Assembly (NCBI RefSeq): GCF_964188315.1
Contig: NC_135667.1
Coordinates: 18,972,001-19,036,000, forward strand
Length of the DNA: 64,000 nucleotides
Reading direction: 5' to 3'
DNA from: Podarcis muralis
Taxonomy: Eukaryota
Shown: positions 3,869 through 47,771 of the stretch, in pieces
Numbering within the stretch: the stretch's first letter is position 1
Layout of the letters: every line of letters starts with the position of its first letter
Position numbers and translations under genes: made by a program
Notes under the pieces: generated by a model
The model's database searches: none
Seen by the model: the letters and a program-made list of their open reading frames with translations, nothing else
Told to the model about the DNA's origin: nothing

Positions 3869-3869
<1 letters not shown>

Positions 3870-9873: not shown

Positions 9874-9904
9874 ATGAAGTTCTCTTTCAGCATTTTCTTC
9901 CTGG
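9874..9904 (+). CDS. Leader exon 1 ([10 protein letters not shown] + G), LRC-type
   Basis: ATG AAG TTC TCT TTC AGC ATT TTC TTC CTG G followed by donor gttagt; 31 nt, phase 1, hydrophobic. Confidence 0.65.
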
Positions 9905-11912
9905 GTTAGTATCACTGATGATCAGTGCAGTGGCTGGGTGGGAGGACCAGAGACCCAGCTTTGGTTCCTGCTGTTCAGATACCTTTTTATTAATAGAATC
10001 CTCTCCTTTCCAGAATGGTGGCTGCCTGGTCAGAGACAAGTACTTGGAGTTGAGTATCAGCAGATAAGAGAATATTAATTTGGGAGGGTAGTGGGATGGG
10101 ACAAAACAGGAGCTTGGTGCCATGGCCTCCCTTTCTCCCAAGGCTGTTTTTCTGACATAACTGGTTCTGCAGCTCCACCCAGCTTTCCCTCTGCTCGACC
10201 TTTATAGGTTTGGCATATCCGTCGGCTCCTGCCAGAGCAGATGCTTGCTTCCAAACACAGTTCTGAGTGCTTTACTGCCTTTCAAATTTTGCGCCATTGC
10301 TACCATACCTAGGGGAAAGCAATGAAGCGGGTCAGGATGCAGGACTCCAGGGAGCTCCAAGTGGGCAATCTGTTCCAGTGGAGGTTGAAAGCAAATGGAG
10401 CATTTTAGGGATTCTTTCCACAGACTGTCTCTCCCAGGCGCTACACTCTTGTGGAGAGTGGGAACTCTTATCTAGTTTTAGCTCTGCTTAGTCTTTGTAT
10501 ATTTGCAATTTACACCATAAAGCACCCAAAATGAGTGTTGGGTATTCTCCAGCTTTTGCATTCTTTGTTCTCCTGAGATTTCCAACCCTGAAGATTTCTT
10601 CCAGTTTTCCAGCCAGAGCTGGGAAGGAGCACGTTCTAAAGAGTTGATAGACAGGAGCAGCAGCAAGGAAGAGAAAGTGGGGAGACTCTTTATGTGGGTC
10701 AGGAACTGAACCAGGAGGGTGACATTGTTCATATTTGACATCAATTCCATGACTTATGTAGGCAAACCCAAGTAAAATATAGACCACTGTTTCTCAAATG
10801 ATGGGCTGGGTGCCCTCTGTGGGCTTTAGGCTGCTTTCAGACATGCCTTGGTCCCCAGTGACTCTTCAATCCCCAACAGCTCCCCCTTTGCCATGTATGA
10901 GGTTCTGCTGTCTGTGTTCATGATATTGTACAACTACTGATTATGGTAAACTTGTATGTGATGGTATGTATTGTGCAAAATGTGTAGGCAAGTATATTAG
11001 GTCAATCAGGGGGAAATTGTGTGATTGTGATGTTGGAAGTGAGTGGCGATTGGATAGGAGTTTTGAAAGAGAGTTGAATACTGGGGGGGTATTATTTTTG
11101 TCTGTTATTATGGTGTGTATTTTTTGCTTTGAGACGCAGGTGGCGCTGTGGGTTAAACCACAGAGCCTAGGACTTGCCGATCAGAAGGTTGGCAGTTCAA
11201 ATCCCCACGATGGGGTGAGCTCCCGTTGCTCGGTCCCAGCTCCTGCCAACCTAGCAGTTCGAAAGCACACCAAAAAGTGCAAGTAGATAAATAGGTACCG
11301 CTCTGGCGGGAAGGTAAATGGTGTTTCCGTGTGCTGCTCTGGTTTGCCAGAAGTGGCTTAGTCATGCTGGCCACATGACCCAGAAGCTGTACGCCGGCTC
11401 CCTCGGCCAATAAAGCAAGATGAGCGCCGCAACCCCAGAGTTGGCCACGACTGGACCTAATGGTCAGGGGTCCCCTTTACCTTTACCCTTATACTTTGCT
11501 TTTATATTGTAGACCACCCTGTGATCTTCAGATGAAGGGTGGTATAGAATTTTAATTAATAATTATAATCATAGTAATAATAATTGACCAGCCGTGCTAG
11601 AGGTAGTCATCATTCAGGAGCTTTGTATAGGCAGTGAAAATATAGATGATTTAAAGCACCTAGCAGTAACCCAGCTATGGGCTGTACCCCTTAGAGAAAA
11701 GATGATACAGGAGAGTTGAGTTGAATCAATGGGTGGTGCTGGCCTGAGTATGGCAATCTCAAAGATACCAGCTGAAGCCACAGGAACATTGACAGTATAG
11801 ATGACACAGTTTCCTCAAGCCTAGTTGAGGTGAGGGTGAGTGATTTTCCTAGAAACTGTAGCTAGGGAGGAAAAGTTTATTGTAGTTTCCACAGAGGCCC
11901 TGTCCAATAAAA

Positions 11913-23900: not shown

Positions 23901-26900
23901 AGGCATTTCTGTAGGTTCCTTCCCTGGATGTGTTACTATAAGTCTTTTTTGTTCCATCAGAGCTCCGTTTCATAAATGGCTCGAGTAACTGCTCTGGACG
24001 GATTGAGGTGTTTCACAACCAGCTGTGGGGGTCCGTTTGTGGCGCTGGCTGGGATTTACAGGATGCCAACGTTGTTTGTGGAGAAATGGGCTGTGGAAAT
24101 GCCTTAAGAGTGCGAAGTGAAGCTTGGTTTGGCCAAGCATCTGGTCCCATTTGGCTGGAGAGAGTTAATTGTACAGGAGAAGAAACATCCTTCTATGATT
24201 GCCCCAGAGGTCCCTGGGGAGAGCACAACTGCAGCCACAGCCAGGATGCAAGTGTGGAGTGCTCAGGTAAGGTTCTCTCTTAGGAGTCAGTGAATCCTCT
24301 GTAGGGGGAAGTTTGGAAAATCCCAACTATCAAGTTCAAATTATTATTGCAGTATATCCAGTTCTGGGATGTGGATGGCGCTGTGGGTTAAACCACAGTG
24401 CCTAGGACTTGCTGATCAGAAGGTCGGCGGTTCAAATCCCCGTGACGGGATGAGCTCCCGTTGCTCCATCCCTGCTCCTGCCAACCTAGCAGTTTGAAAG
24501 CACGTCAAAGTGCAAGTAGATAAATAGGTAAATGGCGTTTCCGTGCGCTACTCTGGTTCACCAGAAGCGGCTTAGTCATGCTGGCCACATGACCCAAAAG
24601 CTGTACACCGGCTCCCTCAGCCAATAAAGCAAGATGAGCGCCGCAACCCCAGAGTAGGCCACAACTGGACCTAATGGTCAGGGGTCCCTTTACCTTTACC
24701 TTTATATCCAATTCTGCCAAGAAATTGGTGCAAGATACAAGATTTAAATATATGGATATTTAGAAGATGAATACATGCACACGCTTTCACACACTCGTAC
24801 TTGTATAGAGAGTTTGTGCACAAGTGTTAAGGGTAATCTGTGAAGAACCCCATACCCTTGGGCATGTCCTGGGTCTTTAATTTATGTGATGCCTTTTTCT
24901 TCATGGGACCTTCCTTCACGAGGTTGCTTCACACTTTATTGAAATCCCCTGGACAACATGGAGGCTTCATGAAAGTGAATCACCCTTAGACATGTTAGAT
25001 ATCTTCCTTTGCCTCCTTTCTTTTGCCTGGTGTCCCACCTGAAGGAAACATCTTCTGTCACTGAACCATATTACAGATGTTCACATGTTGCATTAAATGA
25101 GTGCACACAATACACAATAGTAGAGCTGTAAAAACCAGCAAGTGTGCACTCTTTCACACAATCACTCACACATGTGTAGAGACAGTTTTACCTGTGATTC
25201 TCTCCTGGGGTTGGGTGAGCTTGCTGTTTTGACTTTGGGGGTGAAGGGGTCCCCCAGGGCTGCAGGGGAGGGTGCCTGGGAAAGAGAGAAAGGGCAGGAG
25301 AGAAACCCAGACCATAAAATGGCTGGTGGGCTGAGAGCATCAATGGCACCTTCTGGAGGCAAAATTCCTGGCTAAGCACCCTGAGTTTATGAATCCTTTC
25401 GTGCATTAATTAGATTTAAGCCTGTTGGTTATATGAGCCTGATTATCGCACAGAAACAACAGATGTGCCTTTCAAAAATTCTAGAACCACCAGAGGCCAG
25501 ATTGGTGAACGGCTCAAGCTTTTGTTCTGGAAGGGTTGAGGTGCTCCACAACCAGCAGTGGAGGACAGTGCGTTCTGTTTCCTGGAATCTGCGTGATGCC
25601 CAAGTAGTGTGCAGGGAAGTTGGCTGTGGACCTGCTTTGTCAGCCGAGAAAGGACCTCACTTCGGAAGAGGACATGGCCCCTTCTTGTGGAAAGATACAT
25701 TCTGTTTTGGGACAGAAGCTGCTCTCAGATACTGTCAAAAAATTGACATGTTCCATAAAGCAATTTTTGAAGACTATTTTGAAGACTATTTTGAAGACTA
25801 TTGGAAAGATGTTGGTGCTGTGTGCTCAGGTAATGGGTGTGAATGCATTAAAGGGTGCCATACTGTGGACATAGAAATTGGGTATAAGTTAAATCAGTCT
25901 GTCTCTTTTGTTGGCAGCATATTGGTATTGGTAGTCATGAGAAGGGAGAAGAGATACAGTCCACAATGCATCTTTCCTTTTTCCCACATCCCTCTCTCCT
26001 TTCGTGCTTATGTCTGATGCAAAATCTAATCTTGTAGCTCTTATACTTTCAAAGGGTGGATCTTTGAAATTTAAAGGGTTTTTTTTTAATGCAGTGGTGG
26101 GGAACAACTGACACACAGGCCATATGCCCTGCAAAGGAGAGTTTCCTTATACAGGCCACATCATAGGTTTTTGCTTGGAGGGAAACCTGCTAATGGAATG
26201 AATAGTTTTTCCTCAAGACTAAATGCTGTGTTTGAAAGATTAGGGGAGGGATTGAGGGCACAAGGAGAAGGGGACGACAGAGGATGAAATGGTTGGACAG
26301 TGTTCTCGAAGCTACCAGCATGAGTCTGACCAAACTGCAGGAGGCAGTGGAAGACAGGAGTGCCTGGCGTGCTCTGGTCCATGGGGTCATGAAGAGTCGG
26401 ACAAGACTAAACAACTAAAAAACAACAACTACACTGTGATTCCTGTGTTGAAAATGACTCCCACCGACTACAATAGGCCTTGAATAAAAGCCTCTCATTT
26501 GGTGTAATAGCAGCCCCCCCCCGCCCCCATTAAGGTTAAATGTGCCACAAAGGGCAATTTTTGGGTTGGGCTGCAGCTGAGGAGTGGAGTCATCCTCCTG
26601 TCCCCAGGAACTACAGCTTGGAGCTTGAGTGACTATAGAAAACCCTCAGCAGAGAAGGTTAAACCAAACGGTTTGTGTGTAACTGAATTGACATATAAGA
26701 AGAACAGGAGGCACTGCTTCTGGAGTTCCTGCTTGTGGGGTTTTATATTCCAGGCCACATATTTCAGGTTTGAGGTCGGGGACCAGGTCTTGTTGCTTTG
26801 CCAGAAGTATGTGAGGGGGAAACAACTTGACTCAGTTTTATATTTCCTTGACATCTGATGGGAAGGCATTCTGCATTTTAAACCCAAGGTACGATTGTAT

Positions 26901-27937
26901 TAAATAATTCATGGAAAGGGTGATGGTGTTTATATAGGAGGATAATGTGGGGGGGGGGCAGGGTAGGTGGCTTAATTCTCAAGCCCTCTATTTCATTCAT
27001 TAGATCCCAAATTATAAACAAGGTTATATGACAGCTGTGCCTTTCAAAAAAACAACAACAAATAAACAACAACCCTTTTTTTCCCCATCAGAGACCCGCC
27101 TAGTGAATGGCTCAAGTCGCTGCTCTGGGCGGATTGAGGTGTTTCGCAACCAGCAGTGGGGGACTGTGTGTGATGCTGGCTGGGATTTACAGGACGCCCA
27201 TGTTGTGTGCAGAGAACTGAGCTGTGGAAGTGCCTCCAAAGCATTTGGTGGAGCCTTATTTGGCCAAGGATCGGGTCCCATCTGGCTGGAGGGAGTCAAC
27301 TGTACGGGAGAAGAAGCGTCCCTGTCCATATGCCCAAGAAAGTCATTGGCAGAGCACAGATGTGATCACAGCCAGGATTCAAGTGTGGGGTGTTCAGGTA
27401 ATGTTGTAGGAGAGGTTTTGTTTAGTGTATCCTGTGTAGAGCCAAAGATCCAAAGCAAACATTTCTAGATGAAAGCTGGATAGATTCACTCTTCTGGTGG
27501 TAGAAAATCGTTGAGGGAGAGAATGGCAGGAATGTTTGGCAGGTACTCAGGTAGAAAATGCTAGCTCTAAAACTGGCATTAGTTCCTCCTAAACAGGAGC
27601 CTACAGCTGGAGCATTTATCCATCAATTCTTCCTCATGCTTAAATCTCCATATATCCATTAAGTTAAGGTTTTCTACTAAACTGAAAAAGGTAACGGGTA
27701 GTCTCCCTTCCTCTGAATCCGATTTCCTTATTGTCCTATCCATATCCAGGGAGACTACCCATTAGTATCCCACATCAGAATTATTTTCTGATCCATATAA
27801 TCAAACAGTTTTTCCTCTAATATTTTGTAGTATTCAGATTTTCTTTCATTTGGTGTGTATATTCCTACAATTCTTCCCTCTTCGTCTTTAAAATTTTGCT
27901 GCGGGTTGTATTTGTCATTTACATAAATTACCATTCC

Positions 27938-28219: not shown

Positions 28220-31200
28220 TATGAGTCTTTTTGTTTCTCTTCTTCCTGTTTATCTCCTCTATCTTCCAGGCCTGTTTCTCCCTCAGTTGTTTTCACTCCA
28301 AGTTGTTTTTTTATATGCCCTCCAAAACTGACTTGTCCTTACATCTATGCTTTCCCCCTTTGTATGAAAATGAGATCCCTTCCGGAAATTCCCACCTGCA
28401 CGGTATATCATTTTCTCTCAATGCATCTGTCAGGAACTTATAGTTACTTCTCTTCTTTAGCAATCTGATCGGAATCTCCTTCAAGATTATGATGATTGTA
28501 TTGTCAATATACAATATTTTTTCATAGTTCATCTGTAGTATCCTTTCTTTCATCTCTCTTGAATTGAATATCACCAGACAGTCCCCTGGTAGGTTTTTTT
28601 TTAGCTTTTGGGTAACTTGATTTGATCATGAAGGCTTTATCCAATGAAAAGTTGACTTCCTCTTCTTCAGTTTCTTACCAGCCTGCTATTTCTTTTATTA
28701 TTTAGGCTCTTCTCCTATATATCCTCCTCCACACTTTCTGAGATCCCTCAAAATCTCAAAGTTGATTCTTTCTGCTGCATTTCCAGCACTGCAATTGAAT
28801 CCCACACAGCTTCCTGCATCATACTTAATCCTACCGCATCTTACTTAGACCTCTCATGAGGTCTTTCAGCTCTTTTACCCTGTTTGTTTTCTTAGTTGTT
28901 TCTTTCAGGCCTTGTGTCTTTACTTTTAAATGTTGCATGGGTTTTCCTAGTTCTAAAGTTTTTGTTGATAATTCTTTGATTTGTCCAGTTAGGTCCACCA
29001 CTGATTTTGTATTCTGTTCTATCTTGTTTTCCATCCTTTCCAATTTCTCCTCCAGATTCTTTGCATTATCTTTTATATCTTTCCTTAATTCAGAATACAT
29101 TTCTGAAATTTCCATTTTGGGCTTTGGTTCTCAGGTGGAACCTCTTCTCATTTGGGCTGGAATTGTCCTTTGTCCCACTAGGGGGGCATAAAAGGGGAAA
29201 TGAAAGGGAGGGTGGAACTTTCTCTTTGGCCGTTTCTATGTGCCTAATCCAAAATGGAGAGTCTGAATAAAAATCACACAAAGGGGGGGGGGGGGGCAAA
29301 CCCCCACAAATATTATATCCATATGAAACATGAGTTTTCAGCTTCTTCCAAGCCCAAGCCTCTCACCTTTTGAGGAACTTTATTTCCCATTAAATCTCTA
29401 TCCTCGACCTGTATTTCAAATAACCAAGACTGCAATAAAAAGAAAGAGGAAGGGGAAGGCAAAAAAAGGTTTATTTATATATCCAAGTTGCCGGTGGAGT
29501 TGGTCGCCTCTGGCACATTCATATGAGATGTACTCTCAAACAAGTTCTTGAAGGTTGTGTCCAAGGATTCCGAGAAGATGACTGCAGGAATGGAGAATAG
29601 GCCGGCGTCGTGTGCTCAGAGGGTACCATAAAATAGCCATAGAAACTGACTACACCAAGAAACCCGATTAATATGACATTGTATCAAAAAGAGCTACTTT
29701 TTATCATTCTTAAGACAAAAATCTAAAATTGTTATTATAGTTGTGGATGGGGGACTTTGGATAAAGAATGATGCTTCATGTTTTGTGAGAAATGGTGCTT
29801 CAGAGTCTGTTCCTTCCAGCCCTAAAGTGAACCCAATTAAATTATTTTGAATTATCTGGTAAACTGCAGTCTTATGAGAAATGCCAGCATGGCCACCTGC
29901 CCACTTGTTGTGCCTCAGCCTAAATGGAAGCCAGGAAGAATGAGGAACTGGAGAAACAAAATTCCCTTTAATCTTTACAGATCTCCAAACCATCAGATTG
30001 GTGAATGGAACAAGTCCCTGCTCCGGAAGAGTCGAGGTGCTCCACAACCAGCAGTGGTTGACCGTGTGTGATGAGGGATGGGATCTGAACAGTGCCAATG
30101 TTGTCTGTCGAGAAATTGGCTGTAGCCCTCCCTTGTCAGTCCCAAGAGGAGCTCATTTTGGAAGAGGACATGGTCCTGCCTGGTTGACTGGTGTCCATTG
30201 TCAGGGAACAGAAGCTACGTTCAAGGAGTGCACCCCAAACAACTGGCAAACGAAAGACTGCAGCCATGGAGAAGGTGCTGCTGTTGTGTGCTCAGGTAAC
30301 ATAAATGCTTAGACACTAGCTGAAATTTGAATCATGACTGTTATGCCAAAAGTTGGCTTCTCTTGAGCTCTGATCATCCTCTGAAGGGGCAGAGGGTGAG
30401 CCTTCCTCTTCTTGTTGCATACTCTTTTCTGGGTCTCATCTAGAACACAATTCACAACATTCCTGCAGTGTTTCTTCTAGGCTTTGTTCTGCCTCCTGCA
30501 TCATTTTTGTCCTTTCTGTTCACTTTTGGTTGGGGTGGGGGGTGGGGAGCTGAAAGGACACCATACCAGTTTAATGCAATGTCTGAATTTGAAATAACTA
30601 GCTATTTTAATATCCAGAAAATCTAATTACTATGGACATTTTACATATTCAGTGGCTATTTCTGCCCACAACTATTCTGGGGGAGGGTGTACAAGGGGAA
30701 GGAGTGCCCTTCCAGGGACTCTGGGGTGCCCTGGGAGTCTCGCCACAATATTACTTCTACAATAATAAAAACTAGTGAAGAAACAAGGAGGGGGTAGAAA
30801 TTCCTCTGCTGTGCTGAAATTTGGAATATATCCAAATGATGTTGATAGCCATAGCAAGGAGGAAACTACTGCCCTTCCCTCCAAATTTTTTTTGGGGGGG
30901 GAGGGAGAATCATTTTTTTTAAGTTTTCCATTTTAACAATCCAATAAAATCACATTGAATGTTCTAAATTATACAAATACATATCAAATAGTCCAAATAT
31001 TCTGCCTAAATTATATATTTTTTTTGTTGGGACTTCCCATGCTTCAAGTTCGGGGGGGGGGCTCTGATCGTCTCATATCTCTGTTGCCTTGGATAGTCTT
31101 TCCAATAGTTCCTTTAAATCTTCCTGTTGTTAACCTTCCTTCTTTCATGGCCTCTGAGTTGTTTCCACAAGTGAGTTGAAATAAGCAATGATGTGTTTCT

Positions 31201-34200: not shown

Positions 34201-37200
34201 CATCCTGTAGGTACCCCTTGATGTATTTAATTAATCCTGCAGCAGCAGGTTGGTACCTCCAGGTCAAAACTCCTGTGCCGATCAGTAGCAGGACTGCAGC
34301 TATGAAGAGCCGCTGGAGCCTAACCTAGCAAGATAGCAAATGAATAAATTAATACATTTATTCTGAGTGCGCTCTGCTGGAACATATCCGAACTCTTTTG
34401 TTCCCTCCCTCCTCCACCAATCAATCCCCTTTTCTCCACTTCACTTTTGTTCTGACTGTATTTCCCACCACAGTACACTATGGCACTACAAATTGCTATG
34501 ATGCATTGCTGATTGTTCTTCTTCTTTTTATTGTTTTTATTGATTGATTGTATTGTTGAGAAAAACAGAAACCAGAACTGAAAAGTTAAAAAGCCTTTTT
34601 CAATCTCTGTAGGGATCAGATTAGTGAATGGTACAAACCGCTGCTCTGGGAGAGTGGAGGTGCTCCACAACCAGCAATGGCTGACGGTGTGTGAAGATGG
34701 CTGGGATCTAAACAGCGCCCAGGCTGTGTGCAGGGAACATGTCTGTGGGGAAGCCTTGTTTGTCCCAAGAGGAGCTCCCTTTGGAAGAGGATGTGGTGCC
34801 ACCTGCTTGGCTGGAGCCAAGTGTCGGGGGATGGAATACAGATTTAAGGACTGTGACCTACACTGGGAAACACATAATTGCAGTCATGGAGAAGATGCTA
34901 GTGTTGTCTGCTCAGGTAATTCTAGGTTGAGAGAAACTGGCAATACGTTCATCTTAATTACTACTATCTTTCCTAATAATGATAAATTCCTTCTTCCGCA
35001 TATTTCTAGATTCCTTTTTATTTTGTTCCAATTTTTTTCATAATTGTCTTTTAAAATATTTATATTTTTGGTTGTTAACCAGACCCCCAAATATGTGATT
35101 TTTTTAAATGGATCTCTATTTCTACATTTTGTTGTAATTCTATTTTATCTTCTCTTGCTAATTTCTTTACTAATAATTTTGTTTTATTTTTATTCAGCTT
35201 AAATCCTGCCACTTGCCCAAATTCCTGTATTTTCTCTAATACCCTCAAAAGGGAATTTTTAGGATCTTCCACCATAATTACAAGGTCATCTGCATATGCT
35301 TTAAGCTTATATTCCTTTTCCCCTACCATAATTCCTTTAGTCTTATTATCTGCCCTGATATTTCTCGCCAGGACTTCCAAAACCAAAATAAATAAAAGAG
35401 GTGATAGGGGATATCCCTGATTTGTTCCTTTCTGTATTTTACATTGCTCTGTTACCACCTGGTTCACAATTAATTTGGCTTTTTGATCAGAATATATAGA
35501 TTAAATCCCTTTCCTAAATCTCACCCAAAGTTCATCACTTCAAGAACTTTTTTTCATAAAATCCCATGAAACATTATCAAATGCTTTTTCAGCATCTATA
35601 AACATCAGGACCGCTTGGAAGGGAGGGATATTAGTCCTTTTTTTGTACACCACTTTCTAGATTTTATGTTGTAGAACCAGGCACAACTTTAAATTGGCTG
35701 TAACTGCCAAAATCTTTCTTTATTAGTATTTGCCAATACAGCAAGTGAACTCTGTAAGAACAATTCTTCTTCCTCTGGGCTCCAGTTCTCCTCTTTCCCT
35801 ACATTCTTGCCTTTTCTTTTTTGGTTTCAAAAGTGGTGACTGAACTGACACTTGACTAATTTCATCCAATAGCCAAGGTTTGAATATCTTGCAAGTCTAA
35901 CATTCCAGAAACATCATTATTTCAGCAGCATCTCGGGAATCAGCTTCTTTTGTGCTCATCCACTATACATTCTCATTTATATTCAGTAACATTATCTTAA
36001 TTTGACCGGATTTTGCATCAGCAAAAAGGAATAATGGCACATTTCCAGTGGTGATGATTGTGTGCAGCAGAATGCATGTCGTATCTCCATAGCCCCATTC
36101 TTTTGCCATGAAAGTAGGCAGGTTTGCTCTGCCAATTAGGCCAACAGAAATCTATTTAAACATTTTGAGGAAGACTTCAATTTTGAAATTCAGGATATTA
36201 AAAGCTTATTTTTCCTCATTGTTTTCTTGAAAATGCTTTGCCATTGTGGTTAGTTGCATTGGCACACTGGTCCAGGACCATATTCCCTCATAATACAGTG
36301 GAACCTCGGGTTACATACTCTTCTGCTTACATACGCTTCAGGTTACGGACTCCGTTAACCCAGAAAAAGTACCTTGGGTTAAGAACTTTGCTTCAGGATG
36401 AGAACAGAAATTGTGCAGCGGCGGCACAACGGCAGCAGGAGGCCCCATTAGCTAAAGTGGTGCTTCAGGTTAAGAACAGTTTCAGGTTAAGAACAGACCT
36501 CCAGAACGAATTAAGTTCTTAACATGAGGTACCACTGTACTTCTGTGGAAAGCAGGTGTATCTGAAAGTCATGTTCTCTCAGAGATGGTGTTTTTTTCAG
36601 CATGTTGCTCTGCAAGTAGAGAGGACACGCCCTTCCAAGGGATATGACTTCCAGATAGAGCATCTTTCCACTGATGTATTCTTGGGGGAAATGGCTCTGG
36701 GGTCTTTTGGGGATGCTTCCACCACTTGCTGCAATGGGAAGAACAAGTTAAAGTTGTGTGTGCGTGTGTGTGTAAAAGAAGTAAGGAGAAGAGAAATATA
36801 TTCAATCCTGCATTCTGAAATATAGGACCCCTTCAAATTTTAAAGTAATGGTCTTCAGCTGACCAAAGGTGATGGCAGATCTGGACTCCATAGATAGCAC
36901 CCTGTGCTTGTCAGGCGCCTCCTCCTCCGCTGTGCACCCACCACTGCGTTCCCACTCACTCCCAACACCCACTTTCCGTCTTCTGTTTTCCCTCTCCTCC
37001 CACCATCCCATTTCCTCTCTCCATTTAGCCCCCCTTGCTTTATCACAGCTTTTCTTCTCCCTGTTCTATGGCATCTCACCTTCTCGTATTTTCCATACCT
37101 TGATACCCACAGAGTCTTGCTCAAATTCCATGCTGTGTTTGCAGCTGCTTCTTGATGGACAGGCTCTCTGCTTTGCAAGAGAGCAGCTGCGGCCTCCAAA

Positions 37201-40200
37201 CAGTAAGCCATGCTGCAAAGGCAAGAGAGAGGTTCTGCTAGGTTGGCAGAATGGAACGAGGAGAAGTGTTTTGGAGGGTCCGAGAAAGGGGGTCAGATGA
37301 GCACTATCCCACCACCACTTGCCAGTTCAGGAAAAGAGAAACTCCAAGAGGGTGCAAAGCAGGACTGGAGAGGTTTGGAGGGCTGCATTTGGTCCCTAAA
37401 TCTGATATTCCCTATCCATGCTCTAACCTAGAACCCTTAACATTTCCCATGGAATAATAATCATCATCATAATAATAAATTTTATTTATATCCCGCCCTC
37501 CCCAGCCAAAGCCGGGCTCAGGGCAACTAACAACAATAAAATAGTACAACATTCTAAAATCATTTCATTCTAAAATTAATTCAACTCAAATTGATGGCAA
37601 CCATTAGGCTAAAGTTCTGTGAAGATTGCCAAAGGAGGGAGTCAGGCTGTGCCCTGACCAAAGGCCAGGCGGAACAACTCTGTCTTGCAGGCCCTGCGGA
37701 AAGATTTCAAGTCCCGCAGGGCCCTGGTCTCTTGTGACAGAGCGTTCCACCAGATTGGAGCCACAGCCGAAAAAGCCCTGGCTCTAGTTGAGGCCAGCCT
37801 AACCTCTCTGTGGCCTGGGACCTTCAGGATGTTTTTGTTTGAGGACCGTAAGTTCCTCTGTGGGACATACCAGGAGAGGTGGTCCTGTAGGTACGAGGGT
37901 CCTAGGCCGTATAGGGCTTTAAAGGATGAAACCAGCACCTTAAACCTGATCCTGTACTCCACCGGGAGCCAGTGCAGCTGGTATAGCACCAGGTGAATGT
38001 GATCTCGCAGCGAGGACCCCATAAGGAGTCCCCATAAGGAGTCTCGCCACGGCATTCTGCACCCACTGGAGTTTCTGGGTCAGTCTCAAGGGCAGCCCCA
38101 CGTAGAGCGAGTTACAATAGTCCAGTCTGGAGGTGACCGTCACGTGGATCACAGTGGCTAGGTCAGGGCGAGAGAGGTAAGGAGCCAACTGCTTAGCTTG
38201 GTGGAGATTAAAAAAAAGGCCGCCTTTGTTATAGCTGCAATCTGCGCTTCCATGGAAAGATTACACCCAAACTCTTAACGGACGGTGCTGGCAGTAATTG
38301 CGCCCCCACAAGAGATGGGAGTTGCCCCCTAATCCCATATCGTCCCTTCCCAGCCAAAGGACCTCTGTCTTCGAAGGAAGCTACAAAAAATGAGGAATTG
38401 GGAGGTGGAGGCACAAAATGGACTCTAACCATTTTAAACCCTACAGATATCAGATTGGTGAATGGTACAAGCCCTTGCTCTGGAAGAGTTGGGGTGTTCA
38501 ACGCCGGGCAGTGGGGGACTGTGTGTGATGATGGTTGGAATCTGAGCAGCGCCCAAGTCGTGTGCAGGCAACTTGGATGTGGGGAAGCCTTATCAGTCAA
38601 AGTAGCAGCTCACTTTGGGAAAGGCAATGGCTCCATCTTGCTGGATGAGGTCAGATGCAAGGGGACAGAAGCTACCCTCCGCCACTGCCACCTACAGCCT
38701 TGGGGAGAACATAACTGTGTGCATGAAGAAGATGCTGGTGTTGTATGCTCAGGTAAAAATTACAATTAAGAAATAGTCCTTATCGTGTTTTAATCTCGTA
38801 TTGTTATGTTGTGAACTGCTCTGAGATCTACAGATGAAGAGTGGTATGCAAATTTAATATATAAATTAATTAGTAGGAGCTATGCAGTTGGGTTAGAGGG
38901 ATGCAGGTGGCGCTGCGGGTTAAACCACAGAGCCTAGGACTTGCCAATCAGAAGGTCGGCGGTTTGAATCCCCGCGACAGGGTGAGCTCCCGTTGCTCGG
39001 TCTCTGCTCCTGCCCACCTAGCAGTTCAAAAGCATGTCAAAGTGCAAGTAGATAAATAGGTACCGCTCCGGTGGGAAGGTAAACGGCGTTTCCATGCGCT
39101 GCTCTGGTTCACCAAAAGCGGCTTAGTCATGCTGGCCACATGACCTGGAAGCTGTATCCCGGCTCCCTCGGCCAATAAAGCGAGATGAGCACCGCAATCC
39201 CAGAGTCGGCCACAACTGGACCTAATGGTCAGGGGTCCCTATACCTTTTATACAGTTGGGTTAGAAACTTGTATACAAGTTGAATCAGCATGCCCATTTT
39301 GTCATCAACACATGTCCTTCAGCTCTGCTGGTGATAATCATATCAATGGAAGCAGGAAAGACCCTCTGTCTGCGTTTTCTTCCCCTCCTCTTTTGCACAG
39401 TCTTTCCTTCGCTTCATATGCACCACATTAAATAGGTTCAAACCATAATTTGTGAGGATTTTATGCAACATTCTGGCCTCTTCTCCATCTTTGTTATCCG
39501 TACTGTGTAGGAGAGCAGCTGAGCTTGCATCTTATTAATTTTATCTATCAGTAGACTCCGTTTCAGTCGAAGCTATTTCTCATCTCAACAGAGATCAGAC
39601 TGGTGAACGGTACAAGCAGCTGCTCTGGAAGAGTTGAAGTGCTCCACAACTGGCAGTGGCTGGCTATGTGCGATGACAGATGGAATCTGACCAGTGCCCA
39701 AGTTGTATGTAGAGAGCTTGGATGTGGTGAAGCCTTGCTGGCTGCAGGAGGAGCTCACTTTGGAACAGGAAATGGTCCCACCTGGTTGTCTGGTGTCAGT
39801 TGTCAGGGGACAGAAGTTGCCTTCAAGGACTGTGACTTACAGTGGAGAACACATGATTGCAGCCATGGAGAAGTTGCCAGTGTTGTGTGCTCAGGTAATA
39901 GCTATACTGTGGCCTTGGAAACTGGCTGCAAGTTCAACTAGTAAGTCTATTTTGCCAATAGAAAGTTGCTGAAGAGTTCTGATGCTGATAGTTGTGCTGG
40001 GAGGAGGAGGAAGAAGGGCAGTTCACAATATAATTTTCATTCTGTGTCATTTTTGCTTTCTCTAGAAACAAAACAAGTGTCCCAATGCCGTTCTAGCTTT
40101 CTAGATAAGCACTAGGTGTGAGTAACATTCCCTAGAGGAGTTCTAAATCCAAACGACGTTTGATGTCCTTCATAGCCATGGCATCATGTCTGGAGCTGCA

Positions 40201-43200
40201 TGCTCCTATACCTTTAAAGTGAATCCAGTGCACATTCTTGCCTGCAAGGAATTCTGGGCACTGTAGTTTACCCTTCACAGAGTTACACTTATCACCAGCC
40301 CTTACCAAACTACAGTGCCCAGAATCCTGGTATCTGGTGCCTTTAAATTCAACATTTCTCTCTCTCTTCCCACTTTCTACTCCCCATCTATTGATCAGCA
40401 AACATAGCAGAGCAGTTGGGTTGAACCCACGAACTGGCACTTCATTAAACATTTTCTGTTGGTGGAAAGAAGAGAGGAATGGCAAATTAAACCGATGGAC
40501 TATGCCGAAATGACAAAACTGACTGGAAAGCTCAGGAACCAAGAGGACAAAGCATTTAAAAAAGAACGGGGGGAATTTACAATTTATTTAGAAGACCACT
40601 GTAAGCAGATGAAAACATTAGCAGGATTTTAATCTTACTTGTGCTGTAACAAATACTATGGATAATATGGATCATTTAAAATATAGATTATGAAATGATA
40701 TGCAGTAGAAAATGTTTATAATAGGATCCATGGAGGAGATGGGAGGAAGTCTCAAGATTCAGAGAAATCTCTTCTTCAAATTTGGTTTTGTTATGAATTT
40801 ATATTTGCAAAATCAAATAAAAAATTATTTTGTTTAAGAAAATCTGTTTAAACAAGCCTATTTAAAGATGTAATGCTGACGTGTGTTTTTAATATCCATG
40901 TTAACATTACATATTTTATTTAATCTCTGTTTAATGGTAACTTTTATTGATAATTTCAACGTATATTCTTATTCTGATCAAGGGCTTTCAAATAACATTA
41001 AATAAAGTATAAATGAATGAATGAAACTTACAGAATCAGAACCTGAGGCTTCCGAGGTGCAGAGTGGGGCTCCCAGGATGCCTTAGGTTTTAGCCCCTCT
41101 CATTGCATAGGGAAAGCATTAGTTGGTGACAATAGCAGGCCCAGGACTCCCAATTCTTAACCCTTCTCTTTAACAAGCAAGATTCAATGCCACATATTTG
41201 TTACTATGTTCAACTCTGTCTCATCAGAGCTTTCACGTTTAGTTATTTTTTTGTCCCATCAGAGCTCCGCCTAGTGAATGGCCCAAGTCGCTGCTCTGGG
41301 AGGATTGAGGCGCTGCACAACCGCCAGTGGGGGACTGTGTGTGACGCTGGTTGGGATTTGCATGATGCTCACGTTGTGTGCAGGGAACTGGGCTGTGGAA
41401 ATGCCTCCAAAGCATTTGGTGGAGCATGGTTTGGACAAGGATCTGGTCCCATCTGGCTGGAGGGAGTCAACTGTACAGGAGAAGAAGCTTTCCTGAGTGA
41501 GTGTTCCCAAAGTCCCTGGGGAGAGCACAGCTGCAACCACAGCCAGGATGCCAGTGTGGAGTGCTCAGGTAATTTTGCAAGATAAGTTGTACTTGATGAA
41601 CCCAATAGGGGGGTTTAGATCTTTGAGATCACTGAAGTTAGGATCAGATTCTTAGTTTATTACTATCATCTTAAAAGAGCATCTTTAAAGTCTGGGGACA
41701 CACTGGGGGTTATTGTTTTGTTTTTTATTCTGCTGTGTATTTTTGTGTGTTTATACTATAAACCACCCTCTGATCCTTTGGGTGAAAGATGGCATGGAAA
41801 TTCATTAAATACATAAATACGTACGAATACCATTGGCCCAATCCATTCCTCAGCAGGAAAACTGTGAAAGTTTGTAGGTCGTAAATCCTTTGACCCACGA
41901 AGTCTGCCATCCAGCACTTCAGTTAGCCTGATTTACGAGCTGGTCCGATGTTTATGGCCACCCACACGCTTCTTCTGCGCGCTGCTGTTGTCGTTGCAGA
42001 GTTCGTACGCAGCATAAATGGCTTGGTCTGTGTCAAAGTGGTGTCTTCAATAACTCAACTTGACACCAGTGCTTCTATTCTACCAAAGGTGTTTATTCGG
42101 AAGCATAAACAAACAGGAAATAAACCGACAGAATCGAGCTGCATGCTTGCAGCGTTCTGTCTCTCACAAAAACAAAACCAACTCTCAGAGACTCAGTAAC
42201 TCTGCTGAACAAAAAGAAAAATGCCTGGATAATATGGGCAGGCACCCAGTGAATAAGAACGCCTCTGGGAATGTTAACTCTAAACTGTCCAGAACCACAA
42301 CTGTAGTGGTTTGGAGTTACTCGTGCGTAAGCCGACCCCATTTGGGTGCTTGGTTGCCTGATTAAACCCTTCGGACTGCACAGCCCATCTCCGCTTGACT
42401 GCCTCAGTCACTGGCAGAATCTGTCTGTGGGCGTTTCTTAAACCTCTGCCAGCATAAAAGCTGTTTGACACCTAATCGTCTCCGCCTCTCATTGCGCGGG
42501 AGTCTCCTGCGCAGGGTGGGCGTGGGTAGCGGAGTGCCTGGGCTCTCTTCACTGACTTCCAGGGAAGAATCCCGGAGCCCTTCCACCTCCTCTTCCCCTT
42601 GCTCTCCTGGACTCTTGGTGTCACGCGTATTTCCTTCCCCTTCCACCAAGCTGAGTCTCCCCCTTGTGCTAGGACCTTCACCTGCAGAATCTGAGACCCT
42701 CTCCTTCTCCCGTGTCTCTGATGTCAGTTCCCTGACAACAACAAAAAACCTACTGTGTGATCAGCCAGATCTCACCGGGAGAATCCACGACCAGAAAGAA
42801 GAGGAATACCAAGAAGACTGGAAGAAATTTAAAGACTATTTGAATAAATATTGTAATATTAAAGATATGTAATCACTTGAAAGAATCAATTAGGCCTAGG
42901 ATTAACTTGTGATTAAATAAATAAGAAAATGTATGATAAGGAAAGTTAGGAAATATGATTATGACTGTGATATGGTTTTATGAAATGATATTGGAAACTG
43001 CTATACAGTGGTACCTCGCAAGACGAACGCCTCGCAAGACGAAAAACTCGCAAGACGAAAGAGTTTTGCATTTTTTGAGTTGCTTCGCAAGACAAATTTC
43101 CCTATGGGCTTGCTTCGCAAGACGAAAACGTCTTGCAAGTTTGTTTCCTTTTTCTTAAAACCGTTAATACCCAGGGTGCATTGCTTGAAGAGGTGCCGTT

Positions 43201-44481
43201 GCGTGCTTCACAAGACGAAAAATTCGCAAGACGACAAAACTCACAGAACGAATTAATTTCGTCTTGCGAGGCACCACTGTATATAATTACTGAGAAAGAT
43301 GGAAGAGATTTGAGGAAGTCAAGTAATATGTTTAGGAAGATGGATTTTGATCAATTAATTATGTTTTAGTTTATGTGGTGATTTCATGTATTTTAGGTTT
43401 TGTGATCTTTTTTCTTTTTCTTTTTCCCGTTTCATTCTTTCTCCTTTATTATCATTGGCTTTTTTTCTGTTATGTTTATGTATGGAAAATAATAAATATT
43501 ATTGGGGGGGGGACTGCACTGTGTTCATGATTCCCAAGAAGGCCCTGGGGACACCATTCTGCCTTCCTCCTGCTCCATGTTAAGTTGCTGGGTAGGAGCA
43601 CAGGAAAGTGCCTTAGACAGGTTGAGACCATTGGTCCATCTATCTCAGTAGCGTCTACACTGACTGGCCATAGCTGTCCAAGATTTCGGGAGAGGTTCTC
43701 TCCCCATTTTACCTGCAGATGCCAGGGATTTGACCTGTGAGCTTCTGCATGCAAAGCAGATGCTCTACCCCTAAGCTATGTCCCCCAAACAAGAGGAGCC
43801 ATGGAAGCAGTTAACAGATTAGGGAAAACAGACCCAAGCATGTCCTACTGCGATCAGGCTGTGCACAGGGCTGTGTTTCCTTGGGACACGACTAGTTAGG
43901 AAAGCAAGGCTGTGCACCAGGTTAACTCAAATTCTGCAATAATAGTTATCCCCAACTGCACCTGCAATTCTCTGCTAAGTGGCAAGACCACATAGGTCCT
44001 ACTGGATTTACTGTATTGGCCCGAATATAAGCCGCACCTTAATATAAGCAGCACCTTTAAATTTTAAGTGGGGGGGGGGAGAGAAAAAACAGTACCCGCA
44101 TATAAGCCGCCACCTCTTCAGGCACTCACACCCATTCTGTTTCAGCATCAATATTGTAAAAGCCAATTTTTGTAAGGTCGCAATTTAAGCCACACTTTAA
44201 CTTTTCATGGTCAATCACAAAAAAACAACTGTGACTTCCTGCACTAGTTTGTGGGCATATAGAGGAAAACAAAATAATGCAAGAGTGAAAAGTGAGCAGT
44301 TTGCAGGAGCCTCGGTTTTTTATTTGCAATGAATAAGTGACAGTGTCTTCCTTCTCCTGCTTTTACAGGGGACGCATCTGTCGAGGGCAACATCCGCCTG
44401 GGAGTGTCTGCCTTGGTCTTGCTTGTGTTGGTGCTGATCATGGCTGAGGCTGTGTACAGCTGGAGGAGAGGGCAGCTTTAA
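9874..44481 (+). CDS. Predicted multi-exon type I membrane receptor: split leader + 13 group-B SRCR domains + Arg-containing TM and short tail (about 1448 aa if all exons are used)
   Basis: All exons are on the plus strand with phase-1 junctions. Every SRCR exon length is a multiple of 3 with AG/GT boundaries. Exon lengths 31+36+348+348+342+348+306+336+306+315+300+303+306+303+306+113 = 4347 nt. Joining them into one transcript is inference. Confidence 0.7.
10014..10049 (+). CDS. Leader exon 2, 36-nt mini-exon ([12 protein letters not shown]); canonical donor appears mutated
   Basis: Acceptor ctctcctttccag after a 109-nt intron; 36 nt phase 1-1; followed by TTGAGT rather than GTGAGT. Confidence 0.55.
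11131..11488 (+). mobile_element. Sauria-type SINE
   Basis: tRNA-like head ggtggcgctgtgggttaaacc, core gtgcaagtagataaatagg, (ACCTTT)n tail. Confidence 0.9.
12437..12572. mobile_element. hAT-type MITE
   Basis: Long TIRs CAGTGTTTCCCAACCTTGGGTCTCCAGCTG; 8-bp TSD CATTAGAG. Confidence 0.9.
13217..13712. mobile_element. Tc1/mariner-type (CCGTA-terminus) MITE with GC-rich interior
   Basis: TIR CCGTATTTTTCGCCCTATA / TATAGGGCGAAAAATACGG, followed by TA. Confidence 0.82.
13849..14196 (+). CDS. SRCR exon 1 (group B, 8 Cys)
   Basis: cccag/GT...TCAG/gtaag; 348 nt; EIRLVNG..C.G.VE...[39 protein letters not shown]. Confidence 0.93.
15171..15518 (+). CDS. SRCR exon 2 (8 Cys)
   Basis: ctttcctcag/GC...TCAG/gtgag; 348 nt open frame with SRCR consensus. 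Confidence 0.93.
16744..17085 (+). CDS. SRCR exon 3 (8 Cys, divergent)
   Basis: cacccag/GT...TCAG/gtaag; 342 nt; [25 protein letters not shown]. Confidence 0.88.
17954..21185 (-). mobile_element. Full-length RTE/BovB LINE in the intron between SRCR exons 3 and 4, frameshifted
   Basis: BovB 5' end (CTTCATGGATCACTGCCTTG), EN ([13 protein letters not shown]) and RT ([10 protein letters not shown]) in several frames, (CAA)n tail, 9-bp TSD ACTATGATT at 17945-17953 and 21186-21194. Confidence 0.93.
21578..21925 (+). CDS. SRCR exon 4 (8 Cys)
   Basis: gacccag/GT...TCAA/gtaag; 348 nt; close paralog of exon 2 including intron flank. Confidence 0.92.
23961..24266 (+). CDS. SRCR exon 5 (8 Cys)
   Basis: ttccatcag/AG...TCAG/gtaag; 306 nt open frame. 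Confidence 0.92.
24367..24703 (+). mobile_element. Sauria-type SINE
   Basis: Same family; flanked by an imperfect direct repeat tatatcca(g/a)ttctg. Confidence 0.9.
25494..25829 (+). CDS. SRCR exon 6 (6 Cys; FEDY x3 repeat)
   Basis: ccaccag/AG...TCAG/gtaat; 336 nt open; weak polypyrimidine tract, so the 5' boundary is less certain. Confidence 0.8.
25765..25800 (+). repeat. Coding tandem repeat (TTTTGAAGACTA)x3 in SRCR exon 6
   Basis: Three perfect 12-mers encoding [12 protein letters not shown]. Confidence 0.95.
26250..26430 (+). mobile_element. BovB 3'-end fragment
   Basis: gggacgacagaggatgaaatggttggacagtg...gactaaacaactaaaaacaacaac matches the 3' end of the element at 17954. Confidence 0.8.
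27092..27397 (+). CDS. SRCR exon 7 (8 Cys)
   Basis: ccccatcag/AG...TCAG/gtaat; 306 nt; paralog of exons 5 and 13. Confidence 0.92.
27700..29290 (-). mobile_element. Degenerate L1-clade LINE 5' part (ORF1 and start of ORF2 endonuclease), with CA/TG microsatellites inside
   Basis: [18 protein letters not shown] endonuclease motif; ORF1-like coiled coil and CRWEFPEG; boundaries approximate. Confidence 0.75.
29487..29621 (+). pseudogene. Decayed 3' half of an SRCR exon
   Basis: Translates as ..[27 protein letters not shown] with in-frame TAG at 29598-29600. No 5' half or acceptor is visible; it lies next to an L1 5' end. Start coordinate is approximate. Confidence 0.6.
29981..30295 (+). CDS. 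SRCR exon 8 (8 Cys)
   Basis: ctttacag/AT...TCAG/gtaac; 315 nt; [11 protein letters not shown]. Confidence 0.92.
30905..31720 (-). mobile_element. Probable L1-clade ORF2 3' fragment, heavily decayed
   Basis: AT-rich decayed coding-like sequence resembling the other L1 3' pieces in the window (40470-40830, 42770-43500); no clean ORF. Confidence 0.45.
31972..32271 (+). CDS. SRCR exon 9 (8 Cys, divergent)
   Basis: cccaacag/AG...TCAG/gtaat; 300 nt open; all 8 Cys retained although inter-Cys consensus is eroded. Confidence 0.85.
33094..33761 (-). mobile_element. 5'-truncated BovB LINE
   Basis: Near-identical to 17954-18620; 14-bp TSD TAGGTAGGATCTTT at 33080-33093 and 33762-33775. Confidence 0.92.
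33786..34152 (+). mobile_element. Sauria-type SINE, variant subfamily
   Basis: gggacgtgggtggcgctgtggg...(ACCTTT)n tail; TSD TTTACCTGTCTTA at 33773-33785 and 34153-34165. Confidence 0.88.
34613..34915 (+). CDS. SRCR exon 10
   Basis: tctctgtag/GG...TCAG/gtaat; 303 nt; paralog of exons 8 and 12. Confidence 0.92.
34935..35625 (-). mobile_element. L1-clade ORF2 RT fragment
   Basis: [36 protein letters not shown]. Confidence 0.85.
36296..36537. mobile_element. Tigger/pogo-type MITE
   Basis: TA-CAGTGG.ACCTC ... GAGGTACCACTG-TA. Confidence 0.82.
37453..38355 (-). mobile_element. L2-clade LINE 3' fragment
   Basis: [24 protein letters not shown] and [10 protein letters not shown] motifs; (AAT)n tail at about 37453-37480. 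Confidence 0.85.
38447..38752 (+). CDS. SRCR exon 11 (8 Cys, closest to consensus)
   Basis: ccctacag/AT...TCAG/gtaaa; 306 nt; [19 protein letters not shown]. Confidence 0.93.
38898..39252 (+). mobile_element. Sauria-type SINE
   Basis: 13-bp TSD CAGTTGGGTTAGA at 38885-38897 and 39253-39265. Confidence 0.92.
39592..39894 (+). CDS. SRCR exon 12 (8 Cys)
   Basis: ctcaacag/AG...TCAG/gtaat; 303 nt. Confidence 0.92.
41263..41568 (+). CDS. SRCR exon 13 (8 Cys)
   Basis: gtcccatcag/AG...TCAG/gtaat; 306 nt. Confidence 0.93.
41730..42737 (-). mobile_element. Probable Gypsy-type LTR (42031-42737) plus decayed start of gag
   Basis: TGTCA...TGACA termini on the minus strand and AATAAA inside; downstream [11 protein letters not shown] resembles a chromovirus/sushi gag motif; no TSD seen. 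Confidence 0.45.
43006..43279. mobile_element. Tigger/pogo-type MITE
   Basis: TA-CAGTGGTACCTCGCAAGACG ... CGTCTTGCGAGGCACCACTG-TA. Confidence 0.88.
44369..44481 (+). CDS. Terminal transmembrane exon [37 protein letters not shown]
   Basis: Strong acceptor cttccttctcctgcttttacag; phase 1 matches the SRCR exons; hydrophobic stretch bracketed by Arg and Glu; TAA at 44479-44481. Missing from the ORF track. Confidence 0.82.
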
Positions 44482-44484
44482 ATA

Positions 44485-44705
44485 CAGTCATACCTCGGGT
44501 TACAGACGCTTCAGGTTGCACTTTTTTGGGTTACGGACCGCCGAAACCAAGAAGTACCAGAACGGGTTACTTCCGGGTTTTGGCGGTTGTGCATGAGCAG
44601 AAGCGCCGAATCGCAACACGCACATGCACAGCTGCGGGTTGCGAATGCTGCGGGTTGCGAACGTGCATCCCGCATGAATCACGTTTGCAACCCGAGCGTC
44701 CACTG
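44485..44705. mobile_element. Tigger/pogo-type MITE immediately after the receptor stop codon
   Basis: TA-CAGTCATACCTCGGGTTAC ... GCAACCCGAGCGTCCACTG-TA. Confidence 0.82.
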
Positions 44706-47602: not shown

Positions 47603-47723
47603 TCAGGAGTGCTGGTGACCACTCTCACATACACGCTCTGTGGAATCAGTGCCCAGACAAGTCCTTCCAACAGCCGCCCAGAGTGGCTGGGGAAACTTAG
47701 CCAGATGGGCAGGGTATAAATAA

Positions 47724-47771
<48 letters not shown>

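What the first reader, a model, noticed from the sequence alone, without database searches (positions are those of the whole stretch)
44369..44481. TM exon with an FcR-gamma-docking type arginine and no signalling tail
The exon encodes [31 protein letters not shown]. From memory, OSCAR has GNLVRLGLAGLVL, LILRA2 has ENLIRMGVAGLVL..LFEAQ, GPVI has GNLVRI..LAEDWHSRR and TARM1 has GNFVRLGL..VEAWYSR. These share GN..RLG, LVL and a C-terminal EA.YS. In those receptors the Arg pairs with an Asp in the FcR-gamma (FCER1G) TM. Here the spacing is one residue shorter (N-I-R). No ITIM or ITAM is present, so signalling would need an adaptor (inference).
Basis: partly seen in the sequence, partly recalled or inferred. 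Interest (0 to 1): 0.8.

Follow-up and report, generated by a model that had tools for sequence, protein, structure and literature searches.

The report
Activating-type membrane anchor on SRCR receptor
This exon is a real, transcribed last exon that gives a lizard scavenger-receptor (SRCR) protein the arginine-bearing membrane anchor normally found on activating Ig-like immune receptors, so the protein probably signals through a partner chain such as FcR-gamma, which has not been tested.

Summary
Window 44369-44481 (+) is a phase-1 terminal exon with a strong acceptor. It encodes about eight extracellular residues, a 21-residue transmembrane helix with Arg near its outer end and Glu near its inner end, an 8-residue tail and a stop. 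There is no ITIM or ITAM.

One RNA contig from a sister species joins it by GT..AG to the SRCR exon ending at 41568 and reads past the stop.

Its only vertebrate relatives among 1.8 billion proteins are leukocyte-receptor-complex (LRC) Ig-like activating receptors. The closest is Rhineura floridana "LILRA2" (71% identity, same acceptor, same stop). Turtle LRC receptors also match.

The ectodomain is not Ig. Ten SRCR group-B exons (15171-41568) lie between an LRC-type leader (9874-9904, 10014-10049) and this exon, and the window holds no Ig exon. The gene is therefore an SRCR array on an LRC activating-receptor frame; I found no paper describing one.

FcR-gamma pairing is inferred by homology only.

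Caveats: the canonical Asn is displaced, leader exon 2 has lost its GT donor, and splicing rests on one contig.

Another first-stage note on this same window (s1-193658) reads the whole gene the same way.

The parts
9874..9904 (+). Exon 1: start codon and first part of the leader ([10 protein letters not shown], then a split codon), donor G|GTTAGT, LRC type
   Evidence: The 5'UTR and exon 1 align to exon 1 of the Rhineura LILRA2-like gene. blastn of window 9792-9913 against L001 9918-10040 gives 73% identity, E 1.5e-12. The alignment is collinear through intron 1. Words from this exon are held in RNA-labelled runs of studies P1 and P2.
10014..10049 (+). Exon 2: 36-nt LRC-type leader mini-exon whose canonical donor is lost (GGAG|TTGAGT)
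   Evidence: It aligns base for base with the 36-nt exon 2 of the Rhineura gene, whose donor is GTAG|GTGAGT. Skipping it keeps the reading frame. Its use in RNA was not tested.
15171..15518 (+). SRCR exon 1 (N-terminal type, 8 Cys)
   Evidence: Pfam SRCR, E 1.2e-35. Phase-1 splice sites. Cysteine count.
21578..21925 (+). SRCR exon 2, a duplicate of the N-terminal type (72% aa identity to exon 1)
   Evidence: Pfam SRCR, E 8e-34. Splice sites. Identity matrix.
23961..24266 (+). SRCR exon 3 (membrane-proximal type)
25494..25829 (+). SRCR exon 4, degenerate: 6 Cys and an FEDY repeat insertion. It may be skipped.
   Evidence: Partial Pfam SRCR match, E 3e-20..
27092..27397 (+). SRCR exon 5 (78% aa identity to exon 10)
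29981..30295 (+). SRCR exon 6
34613..34915 (+). SRCR exon 7 (10 Cys)
38447..38752 (+). SRCR exon 8
   Evidence: Its length fits the 612 nt of the X9 contig that lie upstream of exon 10.
39592..39894 (+). SRCR exon 9
   Evidence: Its length also fits the X9 contig.
41263..41568 (+). SRCR exon 10, the last ectodomain exon, donor CAG|GTAATT
   Evidence: Pfam SRCR, E 2.7e-33. It is joined to 44369 in the RNA contig of X9.
44369..44481 (+). The finding: a terminal exon holding a short stalk, an Arg-containing TM helix, an 8-residue tail and the stop codon (44479-81)
44483..44700 (.). High-copy repeat that starts two bases after the stop, inside the 3'UTR. The end coordinate is approximate.
   Evidence: Word depth is 700-8,300 against about 10 for the gene. 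All four runs have many different loose ends at 44482/44483.

Best explanation
The exon is the last coding exon of a roughly 35-kb wall-lizard gene (9874-44481, + strand). Its conceptual product is a type I membrane protein with up to ten group-B SRCR domains. These are followed, with almost no stalk, by a transmembrane helix of the LRC 'NxxR' activating type and an 8-residue tail.

Shown: the exon, its splice to the last SRCR exon, and its homology to the TM exons of LRC Ig-like activating receptors. Also shown is the homology of the gene's leader exons to the same kind of LRC gene.

Inferred: SRCR exons, which are phase 1-1 like Ig exons, replaced the Ig exons of an LRC activating receptor gene. 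The Arg near the outer end of the helix would pair with the membrane Asp of an ITAM adaptor, most likely the FcR-gamma homodimer. Ligand binding by the SRCR array would then trigger ITAM/Syk signalling in leukocytes. The tail itself has no signalling motif.
For: - Splice and stop: the exon anatomy is. The GT..AG junction 41568|44369 lies in a 1064-nt RNA contig that continues 612 nt upstream, which equals two more SRCR exons, and 29 nt past the stop.
- Open frame: all 13 exons give one open frame of 1118 aa.
- TM homology: the vertebrate phmmer hits are all LRC Ig receptors or a bare TM fragment. They are Rhineura LILRA2 (71%), a Logan contig fragment with no ectodomain exon on it, and Chrysemys LILRA6.
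- Same exon type on an Ig gene: in Rhineura this exon type ends an Ig-domain gene. The acceptor and the TAA stop are shared.
- Turtle anchors from proteins annotated LILRA6, IGSF1-like, TARM1-like and A1BG-like align along the whole helix, including the inner Glu and the SWRRG tail.
- Leader: the 5'UTR, exon 1, intron 1 and exon 2 are collinear with the Rhineura Ig gene.
- Constraint: dN/dS of the TM exon is 0.34-0.38.
- Literature: the NxxR TM subtype is the FcR-gamma-associating one. [quoted passage not shown] The FcR-gamma chain is found from bony fish upward (PMC4016189).
Against: - No interaction data exist for this protein.
- The canonical Asn at -3 is absent: N is at -2 and G at -3. All 42 turtle anchors keep NxxR.
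- Splicing evidence is a single assembled contig from one run of a sister species. In the window's own species I saw only the separate exons at depths of about 3-7.
- Leader exon 2 has a TT in place of the GT donor.
- One SRCR exon is degenerate and one is duplicated. The gene could be decaying.
- No other protein joining an SRCR domain to this anchor turned up, but length limits in the searches make that a weak negative.
Confidence: 0.55

Rival explanations
1. The chimeric gene is transcribed but decaying or non-functional. It would be a recent by-product of exon shuffling between FUT paralogs, and the anchor has no role.
For: The exon 2 donor is GT>TT and the leader h-region carries a Glu. 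SRCR exon 4 has lost cysteines and gained an FEDY repeat, and the N-terminal SRCR exon is duplicated. The canonical Asn is displaced. RNA depth is low.
Against: All 13 exons stay open with intact phase-1 sites apart from that one donor. The frame is kept if exon 2 is skipped. The TM exon has dN/dS near 0.35 and a conserved stop. The spliced transcript was found in a second species.
Confidence: 0.2
2. The anchor recruits a different ITAM or YxxM adaptor (DAP12/TYROBP, CD3-zeta or DAP10) and not FcR-gamma.
For: The one-residue deletion changes the N-R geometry relative to every NxxR anchor checked. From general knowledge, some receptors with this kind of anchor also use CD3-zeta.
Against: The Arg is the second residue of the helix. 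From my own knowledge, DAP12 partners usually carry a mid-membrane Lys. By homology this anchor belongs to the FcR-gamma-associating subtype (PMC6557307).
Confidence: 0.12
3. The helix is only a membrane anchor for a scavenging or shed SRCR protein. The Arg snorkels to the lipid head-groups and no adaptor is needed.
For: The Arg lies at the very edge of the helix. PMC6557307 notes that receptors with this TM usually do not need FcR-gamma to reach the surface.
Against: The whole helix, including the Arg and the inner Glu, is conserved with activating receptors across lizards and turtles. That is more conservation than a plain anchor needs.
Confidence: 0.08
4. The exon belongs to the remnant of a separate LRC gene, and the observed junction is an occasional read-through splice from an otherwise secreted SRCR gene.
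For: Only one contig shows the junction. Retaining the intron after SRCR exon 10 would end the protein after five more residues, giving a secreted form.
Against: The only leader in the window is also of LRC type and lies upstream of the SRCR array. The window holds no Ig exon and no second TM exon.
Confidence: 0.05

Closest known systems
NxxR-type transmembrane exon of LRC activating receptors (LILRA, OSCAR, GPVI, TARM1, FcalphaR, NCR1; chicken CHIR-A; sauropsid LILRA-like genes)
   Same: The phase-1 exon has an Arg near the outer end of the helix, an acidic residue at the inner end and a short tail without motifs. It shows significant sequence homology to the Rhineura LILRA2-like exon (71% aa, 77% nt) and to turtle LRC receptors. 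The gene's leader exons are of LRC type.
   Different: One residue is missing between Asn and Arg, giving NxR and not NxxR. The stop lies inside the TM exon. The ectodomain is SRCR, not Ig.
Group B SRCR membrane receptors (CD163, CD163L1/SCART, WC1)
   Same: There are tandem SRCR domains, each encoded by one exon, most with 8 cysteines, in a type I topology. The nearest database domains are annotated DMBT1, SSC5D-like, M130-like or WC1.1-like.
   Different: From general knowledge, those receptors have uncharged anchors and long tails that signal or internalise on their own. Here the anchor is charged and the tail has 8 residues.
Mouse FCRLS (Ig domains plus one SRCR domain)
   Same: It is a mosaic that mixes an Ig-like immune receptor gene family with a group B SRCR domain (PMC4016189).
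   Different: FCRLS is secreted, keeps its Ig domains and belongs to the FCRL family. Here no Ig domain remains and the product is membrane-bound.
Xenopus FCRL-like and SLAM-like receptors that carry the NxxR anchor
   Same: They are a precedent for this anchor subtype moving onto other receptor families (PMC6557307).
   Different: Those recipients are still Ig-superfamily ectodomains.

Membership tests
LRC NxxR-type activating (FcR-gamma-associating) TM | Arg inside the outer part of a hydrophobic TM helix | tested here: met
   The Arg is the second residue of the 21-residue helix [21 protein letters not shown].
LRC NxxR-type activating (FcR-gamma-associating) TM | Asn three residues before the Arg (NxxR) | tested here: not met
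   The window reads G-N-I-R. All 42 distinct turtle anchors are NxxR. Alignments need a 1-residue gap between N and R. Rhineura reads N-N-I-R with no gap relative to the window.
LRC NxxR-type activating (FcR-gamma-associating) TM | Acidic residue at the cytoplasmic end of the helix, and a short tail without ITIM or ITAM | tested here: met
   The helix ends in AEA and is followed by YSWRRGQL and the stop. PMC6557307 lists this feature.
LRC NxxR-type activating (FcR-gamma-associating) TM | Sequence homology to TM exons of recognised LRC receptors | tested here: met
   phmmer gives E 1.6e-6 in a library of 1.84e9 proteins. blastn gives E 7e-23.
LRC NxxR-type activating (FcR-gamma-associating) TM | Physical and functional association with FcR-gamma through Arg-Asp pairing | not testable with these tools
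   This needs co-expression and co-IP with an R-to-A control.
LRC Ig-like receptor gene (LILR/CHIR kind) | Two-exon leader with a 36-nt second exon | tested here: inconclusive
   Both exons are present and homologous to the Rhineura gene, but the exon 2 donor reads TT. Its use in RNA was not examined.
LRC Ig-like receptor gene (LILR/CHIR kind) | LRC-type Ig-like ectodomain exons | tested here: not met
   tblastn with lizard and turtle LRC proteins found no Ig exon anywhere in the window. Ten SRCR exons take their place.
Group B SRCR receptors (CD163/WC1/SCART kind) | SRCR domains with 8 Cys, one exon per domain | tested here: met
   Pfam PF00530 was run on four of the ten exons and matched all four: E 1e-33 to 1e-35 for exons 1, 2 and 10, and a partial match at E 3e-20 for exon 4. 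The other six were identified by SRCR motifs and cysteine pattern. Eight of the ten exons have 8 Cys.
Group B SRCR receptors (CD163/WC1/SCART kind) | Own uncharged TM plus a long cytoplasmic tail with tyrosine or internalisation motifs | tested here: not met
   The only TM exon after the array is the LRC-type one, with an 8-residue tail.

The most novel reading that the evidence does not exclude
Lacertid lizards carry a working pattern-recognition receptor whose SRCR array signals through the FcR-gamma ITAM adaptor. It would have arisen by swapping SRCR exons into an LRC activating-receptor gene. That would be a receptor class (SRCR ectodomain on an adaptor-coupled anchor) that I did not find described in any vertebrate.
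Probability: 0.35. Interest if true: 0.7.

Novelty: new variant of a known kind. Interest (0 to 1): 0.55.

Why it matters
SRCR group-B receptors and LRC activating receptors are usually treated as separate signalling designs. The first use their own tails, and the second borrow ITAM adaptors through a charged anchor. A natural gene that puts an SRCR array on the adaptor-coupled frame shows that the NxxR anchor module can move beyond the Ig superfamily. It also offers a simple natural test of whether that anchor alone is enough to couple a foreign ectodomain to FcR-gamma. The shared one-residue deletion (NxR) in lacertoid anchors tests whether the conserved Asn matters for assembly. The TM exon taken alone is ordinary, being one more member of a well-known anchor family.

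Tried and rejected
- PDB search: phmmer of the exon against PDB sequences returned only designed repeat proteins and chloroplast NDH subunit 3. These are chance matches.
- Bacterial hit: the top phmmer hit, P0001, is a 2134-aa bacterial low-complexity protein and was dismissed.
- Search for other SRCR-plus-anchor proteins, three attempts:
  - The exon-10 frame as query returned SRCR fragments, none with this anchor.
  - The Rhineura protein restricted to its TM region returned only itself.
  - An alignment of a turtle LRC protein with the three TM peptides was scored over all 534 columns, so only turtle Ig receptors came back. I reused those as a TM panel.
  - Query-length limits keep full-length products (about 880-1120 aa) out of reach, so these negatives are weak.
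- A second copy of the TM exon or of the leader in the window: none found.
- Ig exon relics between 41.6 and 44.4 kb: none found.
- Other joints near 44483-44492 are not GT..AG and sit at a repeat boundary. I read them as repeat artefacts, not splicing.
- Alternative donors for leader exon 2, giving 26-, 35- or 40-nt exons, all break the frame with the first SRCR exon (my reading).
- Literature: no paper held NxxR together with SRCR, or SRCR together with Podarcis.
Full report
**1. The observation**

A pyrimidine-rich tract and an AG at 44367-68 precede the exon. The exon opens in phase 1 and encodes (G)[36 protein letters not shown]. The stop is at 44479-81.

Hydropathy marks a clear membrane span. 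Kyte-Doolittle means exceed 1.6 for the 19-residue windows starting at residues 4-15. The Arg is the second residue of the helix, a Glu lies four residues from its inner end, and the tail has eight residues. There is no ITIM and no ITAM. The exon is unique in the window.

**2. Is the exon used?**

I laid the RNA-labelled Logan contigs of four runs on 41100-47099. In run X9, from a closely related species, one 1064-nt contig joins 41568 to 44369 across a 2800-nt GT..AG intron.

- The contig covers SRCR exon 10 and runs 612 nt further upstream. That length equals exons 9 and 8 (303 + 306 nt) plus 3 nt.
- It continues to 44510, which is 29 nt past the stop, without splicing out.
- The junction codon is G|GG, so the last SRCR domain (ending VECS) runs straight into G-DASVEGN and the helix.
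- In the window's own species (X1, X5) I saw the SRCR exon and the TM exon only as separate low-depth pieces.

The splice therefore rests on one contig. From 44483 a high-copy repeat begins (depth in the thousands, many different loose ends), and that is why contigs break there. The other joints listed near 44483-44492 are not GT..AG and belong to that repeat.

**3. What the exon is related to**

phmmer of the 36 residues against 1.84 billion representative proteins gave four hits at E <= 0.001. One is a bacterial low-complexity protein. The other three are vertebrate sequences.

- P0002 is annotated 'leukocyte immunoglobulin-like receptor subfamily A member 2' of Rhineura floridana. It has one Ig domain followed by SSVENNIRLGVAGFVLLALALIVAEAIYSWRSGQL at its C-terminus, 71% identical to the query.
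- P0003 is a fragment from a Logan contig.
- P0004 is annotated LILRA6 of Chrysemys picta.

In the Rhineura genome this exon closes a gene built as leader exon 1, a 36-nt exon 2, an Ig exon and the TM exon. More Ig exons follow downstream, and no SRCR or FUT sequence lies within 10 kb. At the DNA level the window exon and the Rhineura exon are 77% identical over 139 nt (E 7e-23). They share the acceptor and the TAA, and the alignment has no gap. dN/dS for the exon is 0.34-0.38.

A profile search that happened to return 120 turtle LRC receptors gave me a panel of real anchors.

- All 42 distinct Arg-bearing anchors of this type in that panel read NxxR.
- The closest ones read GNIVRLALSAGVLLALVLILAEAAHSWRRG. 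They come from proteins annotated LILRA6, IGSF1-like, TARM1-like or A1BG-like.
- They align with the window along the whole helix and tail but need one gap between N and R.

It is a deletion shared by the window, Rhineura and the Logan fragment. Rhineura happens to have a second Asn that restores an N at -3.

**4. What the exon is attached to**

The window contains no Ig exon. Upstream on the same strand lie ten SRCR exons between 15171 and 41568. Pfam SRCR matched the four that I scanned, at E down to 1e-35 for the three intact ones and E 3e-20 for the degenerate exon 4. The other six carry the SRCR motifs. All ten have phase-1 acceptors and donors. Eight of the ten have the eight cysteines of group B.

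Further upstream, an ATG at 9874 opens a 31-nt coding exon ([10 protein letters not shown], then a split codon), and a 36-nt exon lies at 10014-10049. The 5'UTR, exon 1, intron 1 and exon 2 are collinear with the leader of the Rhineura Ig-like gene (MTFSFNIYFL-G-WWLPWQ...). There is only one such leader and one such TM exon in the window.

Joining all 13 exons gives one open frame of 1118 residues. Both ends of the gene are of LRC activating-receptor type and the middle is an SRCR array. Another first-stage note on this window (s1-193658) says the same, and I tested both ends here. Words from exon 1 occur in RNA-labelled runs of the same two studies that hold the 3' end. That is weak support for a single transcription unit.

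An earlier follow-up note (s1-193662) names the genome as a wall lizard (Podarcis). I did not test this. It fits the closeness to Rhineura, since by general knowledge lacertids and amphisbaenians are sister groups.

**5. Mechanism**

- Shown: the anatomy, the splice and the homology.
- From the literature: Guselnikov and Taranin 2019 (PMC6557307) describe the NxxR anchor as the most conserved element of the LRC. It is used by the FcR-gamma-associating members (activating LILRs, NCR1, FcalphaR, GPVI, OSCAR, TARM1), its Arg is essential for that association, and it has an unusual acidic residue at its inner end. The same subtype was adopted by Xenopus FCRL-like and SLAM-like receptors.
- From the literature: the gamma chain is present from bony fish upward, and chicken ggFcR needs it (PMC4016189).
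- Inferred: in the lizard product the Arg pairs with the membrane Asp of the FcR-gamma dimer, so SRCR ligand binding would trigger ITAM signalling.
- Inferred: SRCR-B exons and LRC Ig exons are both phase 1-1, so a block of SRCR exons could replace the Ig exons without breaking the frame.

I put about 0.55 on the full statement. I put about 0.9 on the structural part: a real terminal exon, LRC-type anchor, on an SRCR gene.

**6. Reasons for caution**

- The canonical Asn is displaced. On a helix, N at -2 faces away from the Arg, whereas N at -3 faces the same side.
- The donor of leader exon 2 reads TT where Rhineura has GT, and the junction codon puts a Glu into the leader's hydrophobic core. 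Skipping exon 2 keeps the frame but leaves a short leader.
- SRCR exon 4 has lost two cysteines and carries an FEDY repeat. The first SRCR exon is duplicated.
- Expression is low, and the junction was seen once.
- I could not find any other protein that joins an SRCR domain to this anchor. The query-length limits of the searches kept full-length products out of reach.

**7. Comparison and novelty**

The exon itself is one more member of a known anchor family, in a deleted (NxR) form. The gene around it is a variant I could not find described. No paper in the library combines NxxR with SRCR, or SRCR with Podarcis.

The nearest precedents are two. Mouse FCRLS is a secreted Ig-plus-SRCR mosaic (PMC4016189). 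The Xenopus IgSF families that borrowed the NxxR anchor are the other (PMC6557307). From general knowledge, the known membrane SRCR-B receptors (CD163, WC1, SCART) use uncharged anchors and their own long tails.

**8. Verdict**

The novelty class is 'new variant of a known kind', and interest is 0.55.

Noticed in passing
window 10050-10051: The donor of the 36-nt leader exon 2 reads TT (GGAG|TTGAGT), where the homologous Rhineura exon has GT. The other GT dinucleotides nearby all break the frame with the first SRCR exon.
   Followed up: partly
window 25494-25829: SRCR exon 4 is degenerate. It has only 6 cysteines, reads WRTVRSVSW in place of the usual WGTVC motif, and carries a tandem [12 protein letters not shown] insertion. 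It is still open and has splice sites.
   Followed up: partly
window 15171-15518 and 21578-21925: These are two copies of the N-terminal-type SRCR exon (72% aa identity), each with the acidic SDA..SSQVE lead-in. It is unclear whether they are mutually exclusive or both included.
   Followed up: no
window 1577-2749 (-) and 47603-49015 (-): Two alpha-1,2-fucosyltransferase (GT11) paralogs, 83% identical in protein, flank the receptor gene. Copy B runs into a poly-Ile stretch at its C-terminus.
   Followed up: partly
window 42900-43300 and 44483-44700: Two very high-copy transcribed repeats, with word depth up to 47,000. One sits in the last intron and the other starts two bases after the stop codon.
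   Followed up: partly
window 41311 and 41466: The reference differs from the RNA contigs at two non-synonymous sites in SRCR exon 10: Ala>Val at 41311 (runs X1 and X9) and Val>Leu at 41466 (runs X1, X5 and X9). The Val at the first site is the SRCR consensus residue.
   Followed up: no
window 7792-8805 vs L001 15619-16638: A 1-kb stretch upstream of the leader is 68% identical to a stretch downstream of the Rhineura LILRA2-like TM exon. It is either a shared repeat or a relic of LRC intergenic DNA.
   Followed up: no
L002 810-1028: A Logan contig carries a third NxR-type TM exon (TNLRLGVASLVLL...). It has no stop after QL and reads on for 26 more residues. Its species and ectodomain are unknown.
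   Followed up: partly
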